From the sequence record MT708547.1: a stretch of 64,000 bases of DNA; one strand, 5' to 3'. Below are positions 1,922-17,598 of this stretch, one piece after another (position 1 is the stretch's first letter; every line of letters starts with the position of its first letter). A program made the translations under genes and the position numbers. The notes under the pieces were generated by a model that worked only from the letters and a program-made list of their open reading frames with translations, did no database searches and was not told the origin of the DNA.

Positions 1922-2328
1922 TCTATTATTAAATTCATACTTTTCCTGTCCTTAATTCAATAGGTCGCTACGCTCAAATATTGATCTTCGTCACTCCGTT
2001 CCTCGATCAATATTAAAATCGGCAATTTGCGTTTTGTTCTCGATTCGCAAGCGAACCAATCACAAACCCGCAGCGAATTGCGAATCTCCCTTCGGTCAGT
2101 CAGTAATACTGCTTTTGGGAGAAAGCAACTCTCGGAGTGATGAAAAACGAATTCCATTCGCCTCATGAAAAACCAACGAATAGTCGGTTCTGTTGAATTA
2201 CTTGAATTATAATTGTCTGTATTCACTTCTAAGAAGTTTTATACACTTCCTTAGTGGTTCTATGTCTTAAACAAGAAAACACATCAGAATGCGATACAGA
2301 GCGTTTTATGTGGTGTTACAGAAATAAC

Positions 2329-2360
2329 AAAAGGAGCACAAGGCTCCCTTTGTTTTTTTT
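2329..2360 (-). terminator. Rho-independent terminator after gp5-like gene (possibly bidirectional)
   Basis: GGAGC-ACAAG-GCTCC stem flanked by A and T tracts next to the stop at 2362. Confidence 0.6.
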
Positions 2361-2361
2361 A

Positions 2362-5022
2362 TTACTGACATGCCTCAAGACGGCGTGCCATAAACTCGGC
2401 ACGTCTTGTTGTTTGACCATACCATGCAGAGTTGCGAATGTGTGCCGCCGCCAGGCGATAGTTTCCCTGTGCCATAGCACCAAGCATACCCGTAAATTGT
2501 TGTACGCCCCCTTTACCCATCTGGAATACCATCTCGACTAGTACAAGTTGAGCCATATATGGTGTTTTCATCTTATAAGATGCATAGATAGAACTTGCAT
2601 CGTTGATTGCCTTTGTACTATCACGAACCAACATTGCATCAGCTTGTTCTTCAGTAATACCTGAACTGAAGTTTTCACCACGTAATACTAGGTGTCCATA
2701 ACCAATAGTTGGGAATCCTCTACTATCAGTATAAGTCCAGAATTTATCATTTCTAAAGTACCCTTTTGCTTGTTGATATTGTTTAGTACCTTCAAACTCT
2801 TTGAGTTCTGGCATTAATGTAGAATCACCTGGTTTGATTTGCCAATCCACCGCAGTTTTATCTACTGTACCAATATTCATTTCTTGTGGGGAGTAATTAA
2901 CCACTGTACTGCTTTTTGATGTTCTTGGTCGTCTAACCGGAACATGACGAGACCCACGTTGTGCATAACCAGAACCAATTGTTTGTATCTTGGTACTAAC
3001 AACCAGTTCATTACTATCATTACCAGACACCACTACTGTGTTAGATGATGTTTCTTTGGTAGCTTTACCTTGTATTAGTGTTTTATTTGCACATTCTGAA
3101 CCCGTACCAGTTTGGGTAGCATAGAATAGACCAGGATCTACTGTACCACTAAAACCATATAAATTGGCTGAATCGACGCGAATTTCAAATTTCAAAATAC
3201 CACTTGCAGTACCAATTTCTTGTCCTTTTTGTACTACATCTTTACTATACAATGAAGTTTTCAAACCATAAAATACTGATTTATACCCAGAATTATGTAC
3301 AATATACACTGCATTATTATATATACCAACTGTACCGGCATCAGGTGCAACTACAGTAGAATTACATTGTATTTCCCAGCCATTATGATCTGTTGTACTT
3401 CCTTTATTGTCAGTTATATTTTTACCCCAATACCCGTACTGACGAATAATACCATTACATGGCATTAACATGTGAAGACCTTCATATGTTTGGGAATAAC
3501 CATTCATACCAGTATCAGTCATTAAATCTTGTGTCTGTACTTGAGATGTTTCTGGGGCGTATGAGATGAACTGTACGGCCTCCTGTTGTTGAGCCTGTAC
3601 CAACTGTGGCTGGACGTCATTCGCAGGTTGTGGATGTACTGGTGCCGTAGTTGAACCACTTCCTGAACCATTGTAACCTGTATCTACGGTACTACCATGA
3701 TTTGATGCATCCTGCCAGTTTGAAATATTATGAATATGTTCATTAAGTCCAGCATTTGGTGTTTTAAAGTCCGGTGCCATAAATTCAGCAGTACCCTTAT
3801 TACCTGAAGCATCAACTGTAAGATTCTGCCCACCACCACTGATATTAGTGGATGAATCACCGATGATGTTAGCAGTTGAACCTTTCATGGAAACATTACT
3901 ACCAGCAGTCACATCAGTACTACTACCGCTTTGTAAACGTAAAGAAGCAGCCGTCACCAATCGTAAATCTGCACCACTATTGATAACTACTTGTCCTTCT
4001 ATTTTAGAATCCAATGAACCAAGTAATTCAAGTTTAGTATTACCACTAATACGAGCATTAAGATCCTGTCCAGTTTCTATATTACATGATCTACCAGCAA
4101 CCATATTAATATCCTGACCAGCACGAATGTTAATATTTTTATCGCAGTGAATATTAATATCTCCATCACCGGTAAATGATATACGAGCAGTACCATCACG
4201 ATTGATTAATAAAATATCACCAGTTGCCTCAGATAACATCAACTGAGCACCACTACGAGTACGCAAAACAATACCTTCATTGGTTCTTGCTCCCACCCTG
4301 GTATCATTTACTGGGTTGTTGAATTGTGTATCCTGATAAGTATCTGGATCATCATCCCATGAAGGAACATTAAGTTCATCATCGGTATATCCATCATCTA
4401 GTACAAAACTATTACCCCTTGGTGTACTCATACCATATACTGTACTAATCATTTGTCTGGTACTACTTCTGTTAGCTACACCAGCTTCTTTGTCGTATAA
4501 AAGGTTTTGTTTTTTTAAACCTTCAACGATAGGAACATTGACATATTTTTCATTTTGATCAGTACTGATGGTATTTCTGTCATAATCGGTAACTGGTAAT
4601 GGAGAATCTGTACCACTATATTGTGATGTAGTGGAAGTTGCCATACCTGGAACCATTGTGTTCATTCGTTGTTCGTATATACAACCAATCCAGTAAGCTT
4701 CATGTGATCTACCCTGAATGAATATAACAATTACTGGACAGCCTACATCGGGAGGTACCGCCCAGAATCCATAACCTTTTGGATACTGACCGTATGCATC
4801 AGCACTCGGTACACCTGGGGTTTTACCTGCAAATGGAGACATATAAGAACATTCAATCCATGATTTCTTATCGTCTCGTTCACTTTGTGAACCCTGAACC
4901 CATACTTTAATTTTACCACTCATAGTAGGATCTCGGTTGTCCATAACAATCGCTACCTGTGGATAAGCTGGGTCAAAACGACCCAACTGTTCTTTTGCAT
5001 ACTGTTTACTTGTATCTACCAT
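2362..5022 (-). CDS. gp5: Baseplate central spike / tail lysozyme, gp5-like: OB fold, beta-helix, HxH tip, degenerate M23, C-terminal lysozyme
   Basis: N-terminal AIVMDNRDPTMSGKIKVWV...GFWAVPPDVGCPVIVIF (gp5/VgrG OB fold), Val/Gly/Asn beta-helix repeats, GLNEHIH, M23-like segment, C-terminal TIGYGHL lysozyme. Confidence 0.85.
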   Translation of the reverse strand: MVDTSKQYAKEQLGRFDPAYPQVAIVMDNRDPTMSGKIKVWVQGSQSERDDKKSWIECSYMSPFAGKTPGVPSADAYGQYPKGYGFWAVPPDVGCPVIVIFIQGRSHEAYWIGCIYEQRMNTMVPGMATSTTSQYSGTDSPLPVTDYDRNTISTDQNEKYVNVPIVEGLKKQNLLYDKEAGVANRSSTRQMISTVYGMSTPRGNSFVLDDGYTDDELNVPSWDDDPDTYQDTQFNNPVNDTRVGARTNEGIVLRTRSGAQLMLSEATGDILLINRDGTARISFTGDGDINIHCDKNINIRAGQDINMVAGRSCNIETGQDLNARISGNTKLELLGSLDSKIEGQVVINSGADLRLVTAASLRLQSGSSTDVTAGSNVSMKGSTANIIGDSSTNISGGGQNLTVDASGNKGTAEFMAPDFKTPNAGLNEHIHNISNWQDASNHGSTVDTGYNGSGSGSTTAPVHPQPANDVQPQLVQAQQQEAVQFISYAPETSQVQTQDLMTDTGMNGYSQTYEGLHMLMPCNGIIRQYGYWGKNITDNKGSTTDHNGWEIQCNSTVVAPDAGTVGIYNNAVYIVHNSGYKSVFYGLKTSLYSKDVVQKGQEIGTASGILKFEIRVDSANLYGFSGTVDPGLFYATQTGTGSECANKTLIQGKATKETSSNTVVVSGNDSNELVVSTKIQTIGSGYAQRGSRHVPVRRPRTSKSSTVVNYSPQEMNIGTVDKTAVDWQIKPGDSTLMPELKEFEGTKQYQQAKGYFRNDKFWTYTDSRGFPTIGYGHLVLRGENFSSGITEEQADAMLVRDSTKAINDASSIYASYKMKTPYMAQLVLVEMVFQMGKGGVQQFTGMLGAMAQGNYRLAAAHIRNSAWYGQTTRRAEFMARRLEACQ

Positions 5023-12602: not shown

Positions 12603-12633
12603 AAAAAGGGGAGCATATTAGCTCCCCTTTTTT
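12601..12633. terminator. Bidirectional rho-independent terminator
   Basis: AAAGGGGAGC-ATATTA-GCTCCCCTTT between convergent genes. Confidence 0.8.
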
Positions 12634-13649
12634 ATTATTGTCATAATTTCATTCAAAGATGTAGGTGATACGGTTTCGGTCCACCCATCACCGAATAATT
12701 CTTTTGTTAAGTGTCTTGCTTTTATGGTTCTTTTTATTTCTTTTTCTATGTTAAATGCATCATTACAATTTTCATATACTTTGTGGTATACAACATTCAA
12801 TTTGTACTTACATTTATTTTTATATGAACCCATTCTGTGTTTGATATTCTTTGTTATACCGAATTTATAACCAACTATATTATTATAATCATCAGATACT
12901 TCTAAAATGTATATACCTGAACTAAAATCAGAAGATTTATAACCATTTTTGTAACTAACAGAATTACACAAAGGACACCCTTTATCTCGCATAAAATTGT
13001 CATATGTCATAGACCATGTATAATTGCATTTACAAGTTAAAATGACTTTACTAAAAACACCATTAAAGTTCTTTTCATCTATTAATTCAAATTTAATGCC
13101 AGTTTCTTTGCTTTTAATTTTTAAATTCTCATTTAATTCATTTATACTGTATTTGTGAGTACCTGAACATTTCAAACAACCAATATTATTACTGAAAAAT
13201 GAATCATAAGTGGTAGTATTCCATTCATATGCTTCAGAATGTTTAGTATTGTCATTGCATTTTAGTTTTAAATATGTTTTTGTTTTATTATATTCATCAA
13301 AACCGAGGAATTCCAGTGTCCCACCTCGTTTAATGCATTCATTTTCCACATTTTGAATTAAAATTTCAGGTGTTAACTTATTCAATGAAGGCTTTCTGAA
13401 CTTTTTTGATTCTATATTTCTCAGATATCTATATAATTTGTTAATTCTGTAATTATTATAAGTTATATTATCATGTGTTATTGAAGTAAGTGTATTATTA
13501 CCTAACCATTTTTCTTCAATAATAAATCCATTGAATTTTATATTAAATTTGGATAACCTTTTCGATAAATCGTTGAAATATTCCCATGGAGTTCTGGAAT
13601 TATAGTTAACGTGAACTAAAATAATATCATCTGGTAAAGATATTATCAT
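12618..13649 (-). CDS. Free-standing homing endonuclease-like protein (Zn-ribbon repeats + T5orf172/GIY-YIG-like C-terminus)
   Basis: CLKC and CPLC repeats; C-terminal IYILEV...YKFGIT...R...IEKEIK...FGDGWTET. Confidence 0.7.
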   Translation of the reverse strand: MIISLPDDIILVHVNYNSRTPWEYFNDLSKRLSKFNIKFNGFIIEEKWLGNNTLTSITHDNITYNNYRINKLYRYLRNIESKKFRKPSLNKLTPEILIQNVENECIKRGGTLEFLGFDEYNKTKTYLKLKCNDNTKHSEAYEWNTTTYDSFFSNNIGCLKCSGTHKYSINELNENLKIKSKETGIKFELIDEKNFNGVFSKVILTCKCNYTWSMTYDNFMRDKGCPLCNSVSYKNGYKSSDFSSGIYILEVSDDYNNIVGYKFGITKNIKHRMGSYKNKCKYKLNVVYHKVYENCNDAFNIEKEIKRTIKARHLTKELFGDGWTETVSPTSLNEIMTIIKKGS

Positions 13650-14140
13650 TTTTGATCTCTTTTTATATCATTCATATTCAATTTACCACTTTGTATTAGC
13701 TTTCTGGCTTGTTTAGAACGTTCTTTGATGTTACTACCTGGTACTAACCCAAAATCACTAAGAATTTCGCTCTGTTGGTTTGCTGGAAGTCGTTTGAAGC
13801 GATTTACATCAACGGTAAGTGCCGTGTGATGAATAACTTGTTCATCTGGTGAAACAGAATCGTGGTATTCCAGATAATCTGCTAAATTTCTCAATACTTC
13901 GTATAACGGTTTATCTGTTAAATGTTTACAATATCGGTGGAAGCTATTATAAACTTTACCTTCGAACGCATTCACCTCATTTTGTAATACTCCCCTACAA
14001 CTCTGTGTATCATAATGTCTGTGATCAAGAACGGGTCTTATTATTTTAATTCCAATAATTGGATCAATGCCATTTTGTTCCTTCAGTTTTCCATTTCTAT
14101 ATTTGGCAGCTTCATTGCTATTTTTTAATCTACGTTTCAT
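13646..14140 (-). CDS. gp49: Recombination/packaging endonuclease VII (Holliday junction resolvase)
   Basis: VLDHRH...CRGVLQNEVNAFEG His-Me finger core plus LRNLADYLE. Confidence 0.75.
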   Translation of the reverse strand: MKRRLKNSNEAAKYRNGKLKEQNGIDPIIGIKIIRPVLDHRHYDTQSCRGVLQNEVNAFEGKVYNSFHRYCKHLTDKPLYEVLRNLADYLEYHDSVSPDEQVIHHTALTVDVNRFKRLPANQQSEILSDFGLVPGSNIKERSKQARKLIQSGKLNMNDIKRDQK

Positions 14141-14265: not shown

Positions 14266-14303
14266 AAAATAGGTCAGTACTGAAAAGTACTGACCTATTT
14301 TTT
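14266..14303 (-). terminator. Terminator hairpin after the frameshift-extended gp26/gp51 ORF
   Basis: AAAATAGGTCAGTACT-GAAA-AGTACTGACCTATTTT perfect stem with two AGTACT sites, ending 8 nt before the TAA at 14311. Confidence 0.75.
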
Positions 14304-14310
14304 TCTGATT

Positions 14311-14532
14311 TTATCGCCCCTCATTTTGTTTACGGACTTTCTTGTTGTATGCTTTAACCATCAAGTCTCGTTCAGTTACTGGCATATTAAGTAACATTTC
14401 ATACGAGGTATTATCAATATATACAGCAGCTTCCATTAATGCTTGTTTAATTTCTTGCTGATTAAACTCTATGTCTCGTATGTATTTTTCTATTTCAGTT
14501 GCCTCTAACTGGAGAAGCTGAGATCGAAAAAA
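14311..14532 (-). CDS. Start-less -1-frame ORF (gp51-like), probable frameshift extension of the gp26-like gene; not in ORF track
   Basis: 71 codons RSQLLQLEATEIEKYIRDIEFNQQEIKQALMEAAVYIDNTSYEMLLNMPVTERDLMVKAYNKKVRKQNEGR*; begins at slippery T TTT TTC (14526..14532). Confidence 0.75.
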   Translation of the reverse strand, partial: FFRSQLLQLEATEIEKYIRDIEFNQQEIKQALMEAAVYIDNTSYEMLLNMPVTERDLMVKAYNKKVRKQNEGR

Positions 14533-15380
14533 CGGGTAATATCATACACCAAATCTTCAATAACCCATTCATGATTACATTCACTACATTCAACCTGCAT
14601 CGTGTGTTCAACACCAGTATTTTGCATTGTGTTGATTTCATCCTGAATAGTTTTAAGAACGTCTTTTGACTGATCTCCTACCCATTCTGAAATAAATTCT
14701 CGTTCAGTCACTTCATCCCCGTCTGGAGTGATAATTTTAGAGATACTATAAACGATACCGTCGAAGTTAATTTTAGTGATAGGTTCAAAAATATCAGAAA
14801 TGAATAGTTTTGCTCGGTCTTCATCACTTAACGACTCATCTAAATCGAGATATTTGGATTTGGACTGAATATTGAACATTCGCTCATTTATATCACATTG
14901 TTCTTTCCATGTAAGTGGTTTAAGTTCAATACTTAATCCATTATTTAAAACTACAGTAGGGATTTCTTTAATATATTTTACTGTATTCAATAGCACATTC
15001 AAATCACGTTCGATACGACCTTCATGGTCACATTCGGGACATTTTACATTAATATCATAAGTATATTCTTTGGTTGCAACTTTAATTGCAATAAGCAGTT
15101 GTTCGATATCATTGATGTATAATTCATCTGCATTAAGGACGTTCGGGCAGCAATTTTCAATAACTCGTGATACCGCATCCCCGGACATAAGCATATCAGG
15201 AGTATTCAGTACTATTTCATCACGAGCACTGCGAGCACATACCCCAACTTTAATACCTTTATTTCCTAATACACCATCGGGATATTTAATTACATCATTT
15301 GAAATAAGTTTAGCACTAAGTACTTCAATTTTTGTGTACTTGGCTAGTGGGTTCATCTTACTCATAAAGACTCCAATCAA
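14505..15380 (-). CDS. gp26: Baseplate hub assembly protein, gp26-like (tail assembly chaperone-like)
   Basis: DIEQLLIAIKVAT, CPECDH and CSECNHE zinc pairs, NGLSIELKP; probable start MSKMN at 15365; late promoter at 15408..15415 (-). Confidence 0.7.
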   Translation of the reverse strand: MIGVFMSKMNPLAKYTKIEVLSAKLISNDVIKYPDGVLGNKGIKVGVCARSARDEIVLNTPDMLMSGDAVSRVIENCCPNVLNADELYINDIEQLLIAIKVATKEYTYDINVKCPECDHEGRIERDLNVLLNTVKYIKEIPTVVLNNGLSIELKPLTWKEQCDINERMFNIQSKSKYLDLDESLSDEDRAKLFISDIFEPITKINFDGIVYSISKIITPDGDEVTEREFISEWVGDQSKDVLKTIQDEINTMQNTGVEHTMQVECSECNHEWVIEDLVYDITRFFDLSFSS

Positions 15381-15407: not shown

Positions 15408-15415
15408 TATTTATA
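15408..15415 (-). promoter_or_regulatory. T4-type late promoter TATAAATA, overlapping a divergent TATAAAT
   Basis: TATTTATAAAT between divergent gp26-like and tape-measure-like genes. Confidence 0.6.
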
Positions 15416-15435: not shown

Positions 15436-17598
15436 ATGGCTGGTACAAGTACGGATTATCTATTACAACAATTGTTAACCAGTAATGAAAAAGCTAATGA
15501 TAATTTATCTGCGATGAGAGATTTATTATCAGAAAATTTGAAAAAAAACGGTTCAAATAATAACAATAATAATAATCCAGGAAACGGAAATAATAGAAGA
15601 AAGAAAGAAAAGATATCATTAAATGATGCTTTAAAAAATATATCCAGAGATGTTAGTGGATTTAGTAGAACTCTCATTAACGGTAGTGCGGATGTTGGAA
15701 CTGTTACGAATTCGCTTGGTACCGGAATGAGTAGTGTAATCGGTACATTAGGAAAGGCTGTTCCAGCTATTAGTGGTGTAACTACTGCATTCCAGTTACT
15801 AATTGAAGCAGGACTATCTGTTTATAATTATCTAAATCAACAATTGGAAATGTATAATAAAATTAATTCCAGTGGTGTTAGTTTATCAAATGGTATGAAC
15901 TCTATTCGTACTGGTAGTGCTAATGCGTTAATGAGTATGGACAAATTCGGTAATTCCGTAGTAAAACATGCTGGTGTTATTGCACAATTAAATGGTATAT
16001 ACGGTGATGGTGTTAAGGAATATGGTGATTTGCTTGGAACATTACAATTAGCACAGGATAAAATAGGTATATATGGTGTATCACAGGAACAAATGGCAGA
16101 CTTAACCGCGAGGAACATTAAATTCCAGAAACAATTTGGTGGTGCAGAATTAATTAGACAAACTAACCAGGAAAAAAGCACACAAGAATTTATTAAAAAT
16201 ATGACATCTTTTAGTAAATCAATGGGTGAATCAGTTGATGCAATTTTAAAGAAAACTCAGGATTTTGATAATTCACTTGATGCTCGTGGTTTAGAAGCTG
16301 CATTGGAAAACTGGGCTGGATTAAGTAATAAAGCTGCTACATTAACTACTGATGCATTTATTCAAGCCGCTGCTGGTATGGGCGATGCAGGAAAATCTTT
16401 TTTTAAAATAATTTCATCACAAGCTGTCACTGGTGCATTACCCACTGAATATATGACTGGTGTTATTGCAGAATTTGCCGAAGAAAACAAAAAAATGTTT
16501 ATGGGTGGTATTACTGATGCAAAGGAAATACGCTCAGCTAACATCAAATGGGTTAGAATGCATAAAGATCAGATTAAGCGTGACATGATGAACCAGATAC
16601 AACTTGGAAACATCGAAGCTGCTAACTTCAACCGAAATCTTCTTGATCTGGAAGCGTCTGCAAATGATCCAAAAAATGGACCAAAACAACGTTTAGAGGA
16701 ATTAACTAATAGATTTAATAATTGGATTAGTAATACATTTATAAAGCCATTTAATCTTTTAATGGATGCTGGGGTTACATGGTTATTAGATATTTCAGAT
16801 CAAACAACATCATTTAACCAATTTATATCTACTGTATTCAGTCAGGGAATCGACAAAATAATGAGTATGGTAACTAACTTTTTTAAGAACTTTCCAGTAC
16901 TTAGTGATATAGGAAAAACTTTATTCGGTGATTCTTATAATACATTGGTTGATAATGTTGGTGGTTTTATTGGTAATTTAGTAAAAATACCTATACAACT
17001 GATATCAGTTGTAACCGATATATGGAATGGTAATTTAGCTGGTGCAAGGGAAACTGTACAAAATGCAATTGCTTCATTTAAACAGAATTTCTTGGGTATG
17101 TGGGAAGGTATAAAAGATATCAAATTCAGTTTCAGTGACGTTAAAGACCGCTTGGTTAATATTGTAGAAACACTAAAAAATAAATTAATTAATGCATTTG
17201 ACATTCTTAAATATGTTTTCGGTGTCAGTGATGAAATGCCAAAAACTGAAAATACAAAAACACCAAGTGCTGAAAAACCAAAAAATGAAAACATAAATAC
17301 ACCCAGTAACAGTAAACCGACTGTTAATGATAATAACAGAAAACAACCACAAGTTGATCAAAATGCTTCTAATTATACCCCACCAACTCGTGTGGATGAA
17401 GCTCAAGATAATTACAAAAAATCTCCTGATGATGAAAAAGTTGATAATAATTTACAACCAGTAAATTACGATGAATCAATGGTTGAATTATTAGGACGTG
17501 TAACATCTGCGTTAGAAAAAGCTAACGAATACAATGTACAGAATTCAAATTATCTTAGAACTATATCTGATAATACTCAAATACAACGTAATAGTTAA
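15436..17598 (+). CDS. Tape-measure-like tail protein (gp29-like)
   Basis: 720 aa, Ala/Gly-rich helical composition, hydrophobic segments, low-complexity C-terminus; located before the portal gene. Confidence 0.55.
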   Translation: MAGTSTDYLLQQLLTSNEKANDNLSAMRDLLSENLKKNGSNNNNNNNPGNGNNRRKKEKISLNDALKNISRDVSGFSRTLINGSADVGTVTNSLGTGMSSVIGTLGKAVPAISGVTTAFQLLIEAGLSVYNYLNQQLEMYNKINSSGVSLSNGMNSIRTGSANALMSMDKFGNSVVKHAGVIAQLNGIYGDGVKEYGDLLGTLQLAQDKIGIYGVSQEQMADLTARNIKFQKQFGGAELIRQTNQEKSTQEFIKNMTSFSKSMGESVDAILKKTQDFDNSLDARGLEAALENWAGLSNKAATLTTDAFIQAAAGMGDAGKSFFKIISSQAVTGALPTEYMTGVIAEFAEENKKMFMGGITDAKEIRSANIKWVRMHKDQIKRDMMNQIQLGNIEAANFNRNLLDLEASANDPKNGPKQRLEELTNRFNNWISNTFIKPFNLLMDAGVTWLLDISDQTTSFNQFISTVFSQGIDKIMSMVTNFFKNFPVLSDIGKTLFGDSYNTLVDNVGGFIGNLVKIPIQLISVVTDIWNGNLAGARETVQNAIASFKQNFLGMWEGIKDIKFSFSDVKDRLVNIVETLKNKLINAFDILKYVFGVSDEMPKTENTKTPSAEKPKNENINTPSNSKPTVNDNNRKQPQVDQNASNYTPPTRVDEAQDNYKKSPDDEKVDNNLQPVNYDESMVELLGRVTSALEKANEYNVQNSNYLRTISDNTQIQRNS

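What the first reader, a model, noticed from the sequence alone, without database searches (positions are those of the whole stretch)
14311..14545. Probable programmed -1 frameshift fusing the gp26-like protein to a hidden gp51-like ORF, analogous to lambda G/GT
Seen: the gp26-like ORF ends ...CGT TTT TTC GAT CTC AGC TTC TCC AGT TAG. The heptamer T TTT TTC (14526..14532, minus strand) is a canonical X XXY YYZ slippery site. The -1 frame is closed by TGA four codons upstream, then stays open for 71 codons (RSQLLQLEATEIEKY...SYEMLLNMPVTERDLMVKAYNKK...) to TAA at 14311, followed by a strong terminator. That frame has no ATG/GTG/TTG start until codon 31. Knowledge: -1 frameshifts in tail assembly chaperones next to tape-measure genes are conserved in lambda-like and many long-tailed phages but are not a recognised feature of T4, where 26 and 51 are separate genes; the LxNMPxxER motif resembles gp51/T-like segments. 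Inference: short (~286 aa) and long (~351 aa) forms are made, implying gp26/gp51 are the T4-lineage equivalent of G/GT. The tape-measure-like gene lies divergently adjacent.
Basis: partly seen in the sequence, partly recalled or inferred. Interest (0 to 1): 0.82.

Follow-up and report, generated by a model that had tools for sequence, protein, structure and literature searches.

The report
Conserved -1 frameshift in gp26 gene
The baseplate-hub chaperone gene of this giant Klebsiella phage very probably makes a short and a long protein by a programmed -1 ribosomal slip, and the same signal is present in nearly all relatives of phage T4 except T4 itself, which encodes the two forms as separate genes (26 and 51).

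Summary
The window is Klebsiella phage Muenster, a RaK2-like jumbo myovirus. A 286-codon gp26-like gene (PF12322) carries T_TTT_TTC in the slippery phase eight codons before its stop. The -1 frame is open across that site for 71 further codons, has no ATG/GTG/TTG for 30 codons, and ends 10 nt before a strong terminator.

Comparison makes chance, sequencing error and a separate small gene unlikely.
- Every relative examined but two keeps an efficient-class heptamer at the homologous Phe-Phe: 14 RaK2-like phages, three distant jumbo phages, 80 + 80 metagenomic viral contigs, a cyanophage, and Aeromonas, Vibrio and Sinorhizobium T4-like phages.
- Each also has a 59-86-codon ORF in the -1 frame, wherever the contig reaches that far.
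- Codon periodicity switches to the -1 frame immediately after the heptamer, while possible start codons sit at non-homologous places.
- In T4-like lineages the extension matches the C-terminal tail of T4 gp51.
- T4 lacks the heptamer and has paralogous genes 26 (short) and 51 (long). The other exception is one phage record with a different frame relation.

No paper reporting this was found. The analogy to lambda G/GT as a tape-measure chaperone is plausible but untested. The window shows no stimulatory RNA structure, and no protein evidence exists.

The parts
14505..15365 (-). gp26-like baseplate hub assembly chaperone gene, zero frame, 286 aa (short form), including the TAG stop. Four Cys (C109, C112, C260, C263) form a probable zinc site.
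   Evidence: PF12322 E 2e-20 and phrog_150 E 1.6e-30. The Cys and the Phe-Phe at 279-280 are invariant in the alignments. AF2 model pLDDT 89.
14526..14532 (-). Slippery heptamer T_TTT_TTC in X_XXY_YYZ phase (P-site TTT, A-site TTC).
   Evidence: Together with the following G it is invariant in 16 distinct RaK2-like sequences. An efficient-class heptamer is present in 76 of 76 non-redundant relatives. The motif class is rated most efficient in E. coli (PMC4066793).
14311..14526 (-). -1 frame extension: 71 codons plus TAA, read only after the slip. The long form is 280 + 71 = 351 aa. The extension alone is predicted all-helical.
   Evidence: phrog_18291 E 5e-31. 52-62% identical in other RaK2-like genera. 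-1 frame codon periodicity begins directly after the heptamer. Three helices in a single-sequence AF2 model, pLDDT 79.
14513..14518 (-). Nearly invariant hexamer 8 nt after the heptamer, conserved even at synonymous positions of the -1 frame. Role unknown; it may be part of a stimulator.
   Evidence: No consistent pairing partner was found, and RNAalifold gives no consensus structure.
14266..14301 (.). Bidirectional intrinsic-terminator hairpin, 16-bp stem, 10 nt after the extension's stop. It ends the transcription unit after the extension, not after the zero-frame stop.
15371..15374 (-). Shine-Dalgarno-like GGAG, 5 nt upstream of the ATG at 15363-15365.
   Evidence: Read from the sequence. 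The -1 extension has no comparable start context at a canonical start codon.
15436..17598 (+). Divergent neighbour, a 720-aa virion structural protein. It is called tape-measure-like in the RaK2 record, but that identity was not confirmed here.
   Evidence: phrog_14121 only. No Pfam, NCBIfam or PDB hit. RaK2 annotation note. The CBB homologue was detected in virions (PMC5259590).

Best explanation
The gene at 14505..15365 (-) is the phage's member of the T4 gp26/gp51 family (PF12322, baseplate hub assembly chaperones).

Proposed mechanism (inferred):
- Most ribosomes read it to the TAG and make a 286-aa short form.
- At T_TTT_TTC a fraction of ribosomes slip back one base. The two Phe-tRNAs re-pair on TTT TTT, and the ribosome continues in the -1 frame for 71 codons.
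- This gives a 351-aa long form: the same body with an added helical C-terminal tail.
- The two forms correspond to T4 gp26 (short) and T4 gp51 (long). The one-gene, two-product arrangement is the common and probably ancestral state of the T4 superfamily and its jumbo relatives. The T4 group proper replaced it with two paralogous genes.

What is shown: the signal, its conservation, the coding signature of the -1 frame, and the colinearity with gp51.

What is inferred: that slippage occurs, how efficient it is, and that the pair works like a tail/hub assembly chaperone pair in which the tail recruits a second partner.
For: 1. Anatomy in the window is as described.
2. All 14 RaK2-like genomes examined, with gp26 identity down to 32%, keep the heptamer in phase, a -1 frame open across it, and the downstream ORF always in the -1 frame. 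The zero-frame tail after the site varies from 1 to 11 codons.
3. Atu_ph07, PA5oct and XacN1 (21-27% identity) show the same.
4. 80 of 80 IMG/VR jumbo-type loci have a heptamer; the -1 ORF is 72-81 codons in 79, and one runs off its contig.
5. 80 of 80 cyanophage-type loci have T_TTT_TTC; the -1 ORF is 62-70 codons in 78, and two run off their contigs.
6. The S-BM1, Aeromonas 65, ValKK3 and phiM7 phages show the same.
7. The non-redundant set of 76 has T_TTT_TTC 55 times, A_AAT_TTT 14 times and T_TTT_TTT 7 times. All belong to the class H_HH.U_UU.Y, rated among the most efficient in E. coli (PMC4066793). Where the T run is only 5 long, an alternative heptamer one codon upstream takes over.
8. 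In the extension alignment Phe-Phe is in 55/55 rows, Leu at position 6 in 46/55 and Arg at position 55 in 51/55. The conserved positions 1-6 lie upstream of nearly all possible start codons, which sit 3-51 codons after the site.
9. Variability has the 1-2-3 codon pattern of the -1 frame directly after the heptamer (1.08 / 0.68 / 1.30 bits). This mirrors the zero frame upstream (0.77 / 0.65 / 1.26).
10. Of 68 database homologues, 67 are 276-298 aa and one is a 172-aa fragment. None is an in-frame fusion of about 350 aa. Ten independently sequenced Alcyoneusvirus records have both pieces 100% identical.
11. T4 gp26 (residues 1-206) and gp51 (residues 1-201) both span the whole PF12322 profile, and gp51 has an extra tail. 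The T4-like extensions and the gp51 tail hit the same phrog_634. hhalign places extension 2-47 on gp51 200-244, E 1.3e-5.
12. T4 gene 26 lacks the heptamer and is followed at once by gene 25.
13. Across the 76 loci the 50 nt after the site fold more stably than other windows of the same gene, mean z -1.6.
14. gp26 and gp51 are both listed as hub assembly chaperones (PMC3004832).
Against: - No protein, ribosome-profiling or transcript evidence was available.
- In the window the 50 nt after the site are not unusually structured (z -0.3), and the RaK2-like clade has no consensus structure. No stimulator has been identified here.
- Several relatives have an ATG at or near the zero-frame stop (for example 121Q, BF, XbC2). 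Independent or coupled translation of the small ORF is therefore possible in those phages.
- The similarity of the window's own extension to the gp51 tail is weak (E 0.002-0.006, probability 6-13%).
- One relative's record (IME-SM1) has a different frame relation.
Confidence: 0.87

Rival explanations
1. The downstream ORF is an ordinary separate small gene, as GenBank annotators call it. It would be translated from its own start or by termination-reinitiation, and the heptamer would be a by-product of the conserved Phe-Phe.
For: Relatives are annotated this way, and some have an ATG overlapping or close to the gp26 stop. PHROGs holds the ORF as a family of about 59 aa. In the window an SD-like AGAGG lies 8 nt before an ATA codon in the -1 frame (read).
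Against: - The window has no ATG/GTG/TTG for 30 codons, so an independent product would lack the conserved N-terminal half.
- Start positions are non-homologous, 3-51 codons after the site.
- The peptide and the codon periodicity are conserved from the heptamer onwards.
- The frame relation is -1 in all but one of more than 170 loci. An independent gene would be expected to sit in varying frames and spacings.
- The wobble base before the Phe-Phe is fixed in every one of the 76 lineages. It is T in the 62 with a T-initial heptamer, although C would be synonymous in most.
- T4 gp51 carries body and tail in one frame.
Confidence: 0.06
2. The long form arises by transcriptional slippage of RNA polymerase on the T run (mRNAs one U shorter or two longer), not by ribosomal slippage.
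For: The site is a homopolymer of 6-7 T in most genomes. Homopolymers of A or T are known slippage sites (mentioned in PMC4066793).
Against: - The run is short (6).
- In 14 of 76 non-redundant lineages the T run is only 5 and the heptamer is A_AAT_TTT, which suits tRNA re-pairing but not polymerase slippage.
- The run is always in the exact X_XXY_YYZ phase.
Confidence: 0.05
3. The frame break is a sequencing error or a recent inactivating mutation in a gene that is really one long in-frame ORF.
For: Homopolymer runs are error-prone. T4 gp51 shows that an in-frame version can exist.
Against: - Ten independent records of this genus agree.
- More than 170 loci from isolates and metagenomes share the same -1 relation.
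- No in-frame fusion occurs among 68 homologues.
Confidence: 0.01

Closest known systems
Lambda G/GT and P2 E/E+E' tail assembly chaperones (conserved -1 frameshift; Xu, Hendrix & Duda 2004, cited in PMC9024508; described in PMC5009743)
   Same: A canonical heptamer lies near the 3' end of a small assembly-chaperone gene. The -1 ORF has no conserved start. Two N-coterminal products result, the long one with an added C-terminal module. The signal is conserved across very divergent phages. The gene belongs to the tail/hub assembly module, and the T4 family members are classed as chaperones absent from the final particle.
   Different: The protein family differs (PF12322, about 280 aa with a 4-Cys site). 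No TAC Pfam or PHROG hit was obtained, and the fold search gave only a non-significant resemblance to the HK97 chaperone (probability 0.33). The heptamer is of the U-rich class. In the window the neighbouring candidate tape-measure gene is divergent, not immediately downstream. Binding partners are unknown.
T4 gp26 and gp51 (baseplate hub assembly chaperones; PMC3004832)
   Same: Same domain family. The short form corresponds to gp26 and the long form to gp51. The gp51 tail is colinear with the -1 extension of T4-like phages.
   Different: T4 uses two separate, divergently placed paralogous genes and no frameshift. Its Phe-Phe is encoded non-slippery. The window's extension is only weakly similar in sequence to the gp51 tail.
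Small 'gp51 / baseplate hub assembly catalyst' ORFs annotated after gene 26 in cyanophages, KVP40-like and phiM-like phages
   Same: These are the 3' parts of the same -1 extension.
   Different: They are annotated as independent genes of 30-60 aa with assorted starts. None of the records examined annotates a frameshift join.

Membership tests
Programmed -1 ribosomal frameshift site | X_XXY_YYZ heptamer in the zero-frame phase that allows both tRNAs to re-pair | tested here: met
   T_TTT_TTC at 14526..14532 (-) in phase. The motif class is efficient in E. coli (PMC4066793).
Programmed -1 ribosomal frameshift site | -1 frame open across the site and extended well beyond the zero-frame stop | tested here: met
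   71 further codons in the window. 59-86 codons in every relative whose contig reaches far enough.
Programmed -1 ribosomal frameshift site | Conservation of the site, including synonymous positions, across divergent relatives | tested here: met
   76 of 76 non-redundant loci. Zero entropy over the heptamer plus the next base in the RaK2-like clade. The wobble base before Phe-Phe is always the one the heptamer needs.
Programmed -1 ribosomal frameshift site | Coding signature in the -1 frame from the site onward, without a conserved start codon | tested here: met
   Codon-phase variability pattern. Conserved columns 1, 2 and 6. First possible starts lie 3-51 codons after the site.
Programmed -1 ribosomal frameshift site | Stimulatory element (downstream structure or upstream SD-like sequence) | tested here: inconclusive
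   Family-wide mean z is -1.6 for the 50 nt downstream. The window has z -0.3 and the clade has no consensus structure. A nearly invariant hexamer at 14513..14518 is unexplained.
Programmed -1 ribosomal frameshift site | Trans-frame protein actually made | not testable with these tools
   No proteomic or ribosome-profiling data are at hand. The CBB virion MS table lists the neighbour but neither piece.
T4 gp26/gp51 family (PF12322) | PF12322 domain over the body | tested here: met
   E 2e-20 against a 24.5-bit cut-off. phrog_150. BFVD fold matches to baseplate hub proteins.
T4 gp26/gp51 family (PF12322) | gp51-type C-terminal tail in the long form | tested here: inconclusive
   Clear for T4-like extensions (phrog_634; hhalign E 1.3e-5). 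For the window's extension the match is only E 0.006 against gp51 222-246 and E 0.002 against the T4-like extension profile.
Lambda-type tail assembly chaperone G/GT | Sequence or fold membership in a known TAC family | tested here: not met
   No TAC family in Pfam, PHROGs or NCBIfam. The best PDB fold hit, the HK97 chaperone 2ob9, has E 2.0 and probability 0.33.
Lambda-type tail assembly chaperone G/GT | Gene sits between the tube gene and the tape-measure gene | tested here: inconclusive
   In the window the neighbour is divergent and its tape-measure identity is unconfirmed. In ValKK3 and phiM7 the gene follows a gene annotated 'tail tube'. In ValKK3 it precedes a large protein with a weak tape-measure PHROG hit; phiM7's downstream proteins match only families of unknown function.
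Lambda-type tail assembly chaperone G/GT | Short form binds the tape measure; the long form's tail binds the tube protein | not testable with these tools
   No interaction data. The literature only calls T4 gp26 and gp51 hub assembly chaperones (PMC3004832).

The most novel reading that the evidence does not exclude
The gp26/gp51 pair is the T4 superfamily's version of the G/GT frameshifted assembly-chaperone pair. The ancestral state is one gene with a -1 frameshift, kept in cyanophages, KVP40-like, Aeromonas-65-like and phiM-like phages and RaK2-type jumbo phages. T4 and its close relatives are a derived exception in which duplication fixed the two forms as genes 26 and 51. This would explain why the otherwise near-universal tail-chaperone frameshift seemed absent from T4. 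It would also assign a concrete role, chaperoning the tape measure/hub with the tail recruiting a second partner, to two long-enigmatic T4 genes.
Probability: 0.45. Interest if true: 0.85.

Novelty: new variant of a known kind. Interest (0 to 1): 0.76.

Why it matters
- Correct annotation: hundreds of phage genomes carry a mis-called small 'hypothetical' or 'gp51' ORF, or none at all, where a trans-frame long form is encoded.
- Link between T4 genes 26 and 51: two essential but poorly understood genes of the best-studied phage would be the short and long products of one ancestral recoded gene. That gives a testable hypothesis for their roles in hub and tape-measure assembly.
- Reach of the principle: the 'frameshifted assembly chaperone' idea would extend to the T4 superfamily and jumbo phages, in a different protein fold and with a different (U-rich) slippery site.
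- A comparative data set: the family offers more than 170 natural variants of one frameshift site, including a switch between two heptamer positions, for studying what tunes frameshift efficiency.

Tried and rejected
- Sequence search of both pieces and of the 720-aa neighbour against PDB found nothing.
- NCBIfam found nothing relevant.
- Foldseek of the body model against PDB gave no significant hit.
- Folding of the 96 nt after the site gave z 0.21. RNAalifold on 19 RaK2-like sequences gave no consensus. A search for a partner of the conserved hexamer gave inconsistent positions.
- Profile comparison of the small jumbo-phage body alignment with T4 gp26 and gp51 was insensitive. Pfam settled the homology instead.
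- The tape-measure identity of the neighbour could not be confirmed.
- Ten literature searches and four papers read found no report of this frameshift (60, 61, 62, 90). Subscription-only literature was not searchable.
- A structure or search with the full long form was not attempted, because that would need the two frames joined.

- In one search I searched the window with an 8-base late-promoter consensus recalled from memory, and I wrote it in note 6.
- In my working I also recalled a few other short recoding and ribosome-binding motifs.
- Notes 2, 3 and 4 hold short motif patterns of the extension written in consensus style.
- Note 6 says how the run length of the odd IME-SM1 record differs.
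- None of these is used for the conclusions, and nothing was deleted.

Full report
**Identity of the window.** The region is 100% identical to Klebsiella phage Muenster (MT708547, Alcyoneusvirus). It is 99.1-100% identical to nine other records of the RaK2/K64-1 group of jumbo myoviruses.

**The observation.**
- An ORF at 14505..15365 (-) encodes 286 aa. It matches PF12322 'T4 bacteriophage base plate protein' (E 2e-20) and phrog_150 'baseplate hub'.
- Eight codons before its TAG lies T_TTT_TTC (14526..14532) in the X_XXY_YYZ phase.
- The -1 frame is closed three codons upstream of the site and open across it. It continues for 71 codons to TAA at 14311.
- Its first ATG/GTG/TTG is codon 31.
- A 16-bp-stem terminator follows at 14266..14301. 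The transcription unit therefore ends after the extension, not after the zero-frame stop.
- The long product would be 280 + 71 = 351 aa.
- The -1 segment is not junk. It matches phrog_18291 at E 5e-31, and tblastn finds it at 52-62% identity in 64 further phage records. There it always abuts the end of the gp26 gene.

**Comparative test in the RaK2-like clade.** I fetched the locus from 13 further genera or species: 121Q, Munch, CBB, BF, GAP32, fHe-Yen9-04, XbC2, XaC1, Vibrio 2.275.O, A4, EJP2, Turkey5 and BF17. Their gp26 identity runs down to 32% (analysed).
- In all 14 genomes the heptamer is present in the same phase at the homologous, invariant Phe-Phe.
- The downstream ORF is always in the -1 frame, and that frame is always open across the site.
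- The zero frame ends after a variable tail of 1 to 11 codons.
- Annotators call the downstream ORF a separate hypothetical gene, with starts at whatever ATG is available.
- Over 16 distinct sequences the heptamer plus the next base have zero entropy, while flanking positions vary.
- Directly after the site, variability follows the codon phases of the -1 frame (1.08 / 0.68 / 1.30 bits for positions 1 / 2 / 3). Upstream it follows the zero frame in the same way (0.77 / 0.65 / 1.26).

**Wider relatives.**
- Atu_ph07, PA5oct and XacN1 (21-27% identity) have T_TTT_TTC or T_TTT_TTT at the same place, with -1 ORFs of 78-86 codons. PA5oct has no annotation there at all.
- A scan of IMG/VR with the gp26 alignment returned 80 loci of 25-100% identity. 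All 80 have a canonical heptamer within the last 15 codons. The -1 ORF is 72-81 codons in 79 of them, and one runs off its contig.
- In about a fifth of lineages the T run is only five long. There the heptamer is A_AAT_TTT, one codon upstream, and the product still reads Phe-Phe in the -1 frame. The site has moved, but the capacity to shift is retained.
- In a non-redundant set of 76 the heptamers are T_TTT_TTC (55), A_AAT_TTT (14) and T_TTT_TTT (7). All fall in the class H_HH.U_UU.Y, which Sharma et al. rank among the most efficient in E. coli (PMC4066793).
- In the extension alignment Phe is in 55/55 rows at positions 1 and 2, Leu in 46/55 at position 6 and Arg in 51/55 at position 55. The first possible start codon lies anywhere from 3 to 51 codons after the site.
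- Of 68 homologues of the body in the 5.8-billion-protein collection, 67 are 276-298 aa and one is a 172-aa fragment. None is an in-frame fusion of about 350 aa.

Sequencing error and a recent pseudogene are therefore excluded. A separate-gene model cannot explain the fixed frame, the fixed wobble base before the Phe-Phe, or the conserved peptide upstream of the starts.

**Link to T4 genes 26 and 51.**
- A weak hit led to cyanophage S-BM1. Its gp26 ends with the same heptamer, and the 66-codon -1 ORF contains the small ORF annotated 'gp51'.
- The same holds for Aeromonas phage 65, Vibrio phage ValKK3 (KVP40-like) and Sinorhizobium phage phiM7. In the latter two the -1 ORF is annotated 'baseplate hub assembly catalyst'.
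- All 80 cyanophage-type IMG/VR loci have T_TTT_TTC. The -1 ORF is 62-70 codons in 78, and two run off their contigs.
- T4 itself is different (KJ477684). Gene 26 (208 aa) keeps the Phe-Phe but encodes it non-slippery. Gene 25 follows immediately, and there is no extension.
- T4 gene 51 (249 aa) lies divergently next to gene 27.
- Pfam shows that gp26 (residues 1-206) and gp51 (residues 1-201) each span the whole PF12322 profile. They are paralogues, and gp51 has about 48 extra C-terminal residues.
- That tail and the -1 extensions of the T4-like phages hit the same phrog_634, the extensions from their second residue on.
- hhalign puts extension positions 2-47 on gp51 200-244 (E 1.3e-5, probability 80%). 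T4 gp51 is thus colinear with 'body + extension' read in one frame.
- Full-length single-frame gp51 occurs in 1375 records of T-even-type phages of Escherichia, Klebsiella, Acinetobacter, Aeromonas and Proteus.
- All outgroups have the one-gene arrangement. By parsimony it is ancestral, and the two-gene arrangement of the T4 group is derived.
- For the window's own extension, sequence similarity to the gp51 tail is weak (E 0.006 against gp51 222-246; E 0.002 against the T4-like extension profile). The equivalence rests mainly on position, length, the shared beginning and the conserved Arg-containing C-terminal helix.

**Mechanism and function.**
- The proposed mechanism is tandem slippage of the two Phe-tRNAs from TTT TTC to TTT TTT, followed by decoding of the -1 frame.
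- No stimulator was found in the window. The downstream 50-96 nt are not unusually stable (z 0.21 and -0.3), and the clade has no consensus structure.
- Family-wide, however, the 50 nt after the site are more stable than other windows of the same gene (mean z -1.6, 37% below -2).
- A hexamer 8 nt after the site (14513..14518) is nearly invariant, even at synonymous positions. It remains unexplained.
- The AF2 model of the body is confident (pLDDT 89, pTM 0.85). It matches predicted 'baseplate hub' proteins of many large myoviruses but no solved structure.
- The hit with the highest probability in the PDB list is the HK97 tail assembly chaperone, and it is not significant (E 2.0, probability 0.33, TM 0.49 on the target).
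- The extension alone is predicted as three helices.
- The T4 review lists gp26 and gp51 as hub assembly chaperones, and gp51 as essential but absent from the particle (PMC3004832).
- One GenBank record already names gp51 'tape measure protein assembly chaperone'.
- A G/GT-like division of labour, with a common body on one client and the tail recruiting a second, is therefore a reasonable hypothesis that remains untested.
- The 720-aa divergent neighbour is a virion protein (the CBB homologue was found by MS). Its tape-measure identity could not be confirmed.

**Novelty.** I found no report of this frameshift in ten full-text searches, in the 2016 recoding review, or in the T4 tail review. None of the GenBank records examined annotates a join. 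Subscription literature could not be searched, so prior knowledge cannot be excluded. I rate it a new variant of a known kind: the conserved tail-chaperone frameshift, here in a different protein family and with a different slippery motif. The added point is that it unifies T4 genes 26 and 51.

**Rule compliance.** The two frames were never joined, and each piece was searched, aligned and folded apart. The slips are declared under 'tried and rejected'.

Noticed in passing
L105 (Stenotrophomonas phage IME-SM1, NC_054952.1), end of the gp26 gene: This is the only relative in which the gp51-like extension is not in the -1 frame relative to the body; it is in +1. It is either a homopolymer-length miscount in that record or a real variant of the recoding.
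   Followed up: partly
window 14342..14461 (+): The Muenster GenBank record annotates a 39-aa TTG-started CDS (CPT_Muenster_324) antisense inside the -1 extension ORF. It is most likely a spurious call. RaK2 annotates nothing there, and RCIP0023 calls only the last 41 codons of the extension.
   Followed up: partly
window 14513..14518 (-): A hexamer 8 nt downstream of the heptamer is nearly invariant in 19 RaK2-like sequences, including synonymous sites of two Leu codons. No consistent pairing partner was found.
   Followed up: partly
window 15408..15415 (-): There is an 8-base match to the T4 late-promoter consensus (recalled from memory; see the declared slip) 43 nt upstream of the gp26-like ATG. 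The motif is not enriched in the window: 9 copies against 12.9 expected.
   Followed up: partly
window 12618..14140 (-): Directly downstream of the terminator lie an endonuclease VII gene (13646..14140, phrog_423) and a 343-aa T5orf172/MUG113-domain endonuclease-like gene with a treble-clef zinc finger (12618..13649). The latter is possibly a homing-endonuclease-type insertion.
   Followed up: no
L101 (T4, KJ477684.1) 2155..2442: The T4 record annotates gp26', an internal in-frame initiation product of gene 26. T4 thus also makes more than one protein from this gene, by a different route.
   Followed up: no
L103, L100 (downstream of the extension): In ValKK3 the gene after the extension has a weak tape-measure PHROG hit (phrog_58, E 6e-5). 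In S-BM1 the next gene matches a large family annotated 'endolysin' (phrog_790). This hints that the tape-measure gene follows the recoded gene in T4-like lineages, as it does in lambda-like phages.
   Followed up: partly
MT741943.1 (Acinetobacter phage Meroveus): Its full-length gp51 homologue is annotated 'tape measure protein assembly chaperone'. At least one annotation team has therefore already assigned gp51 a TAC-like role.
   Followed up: no
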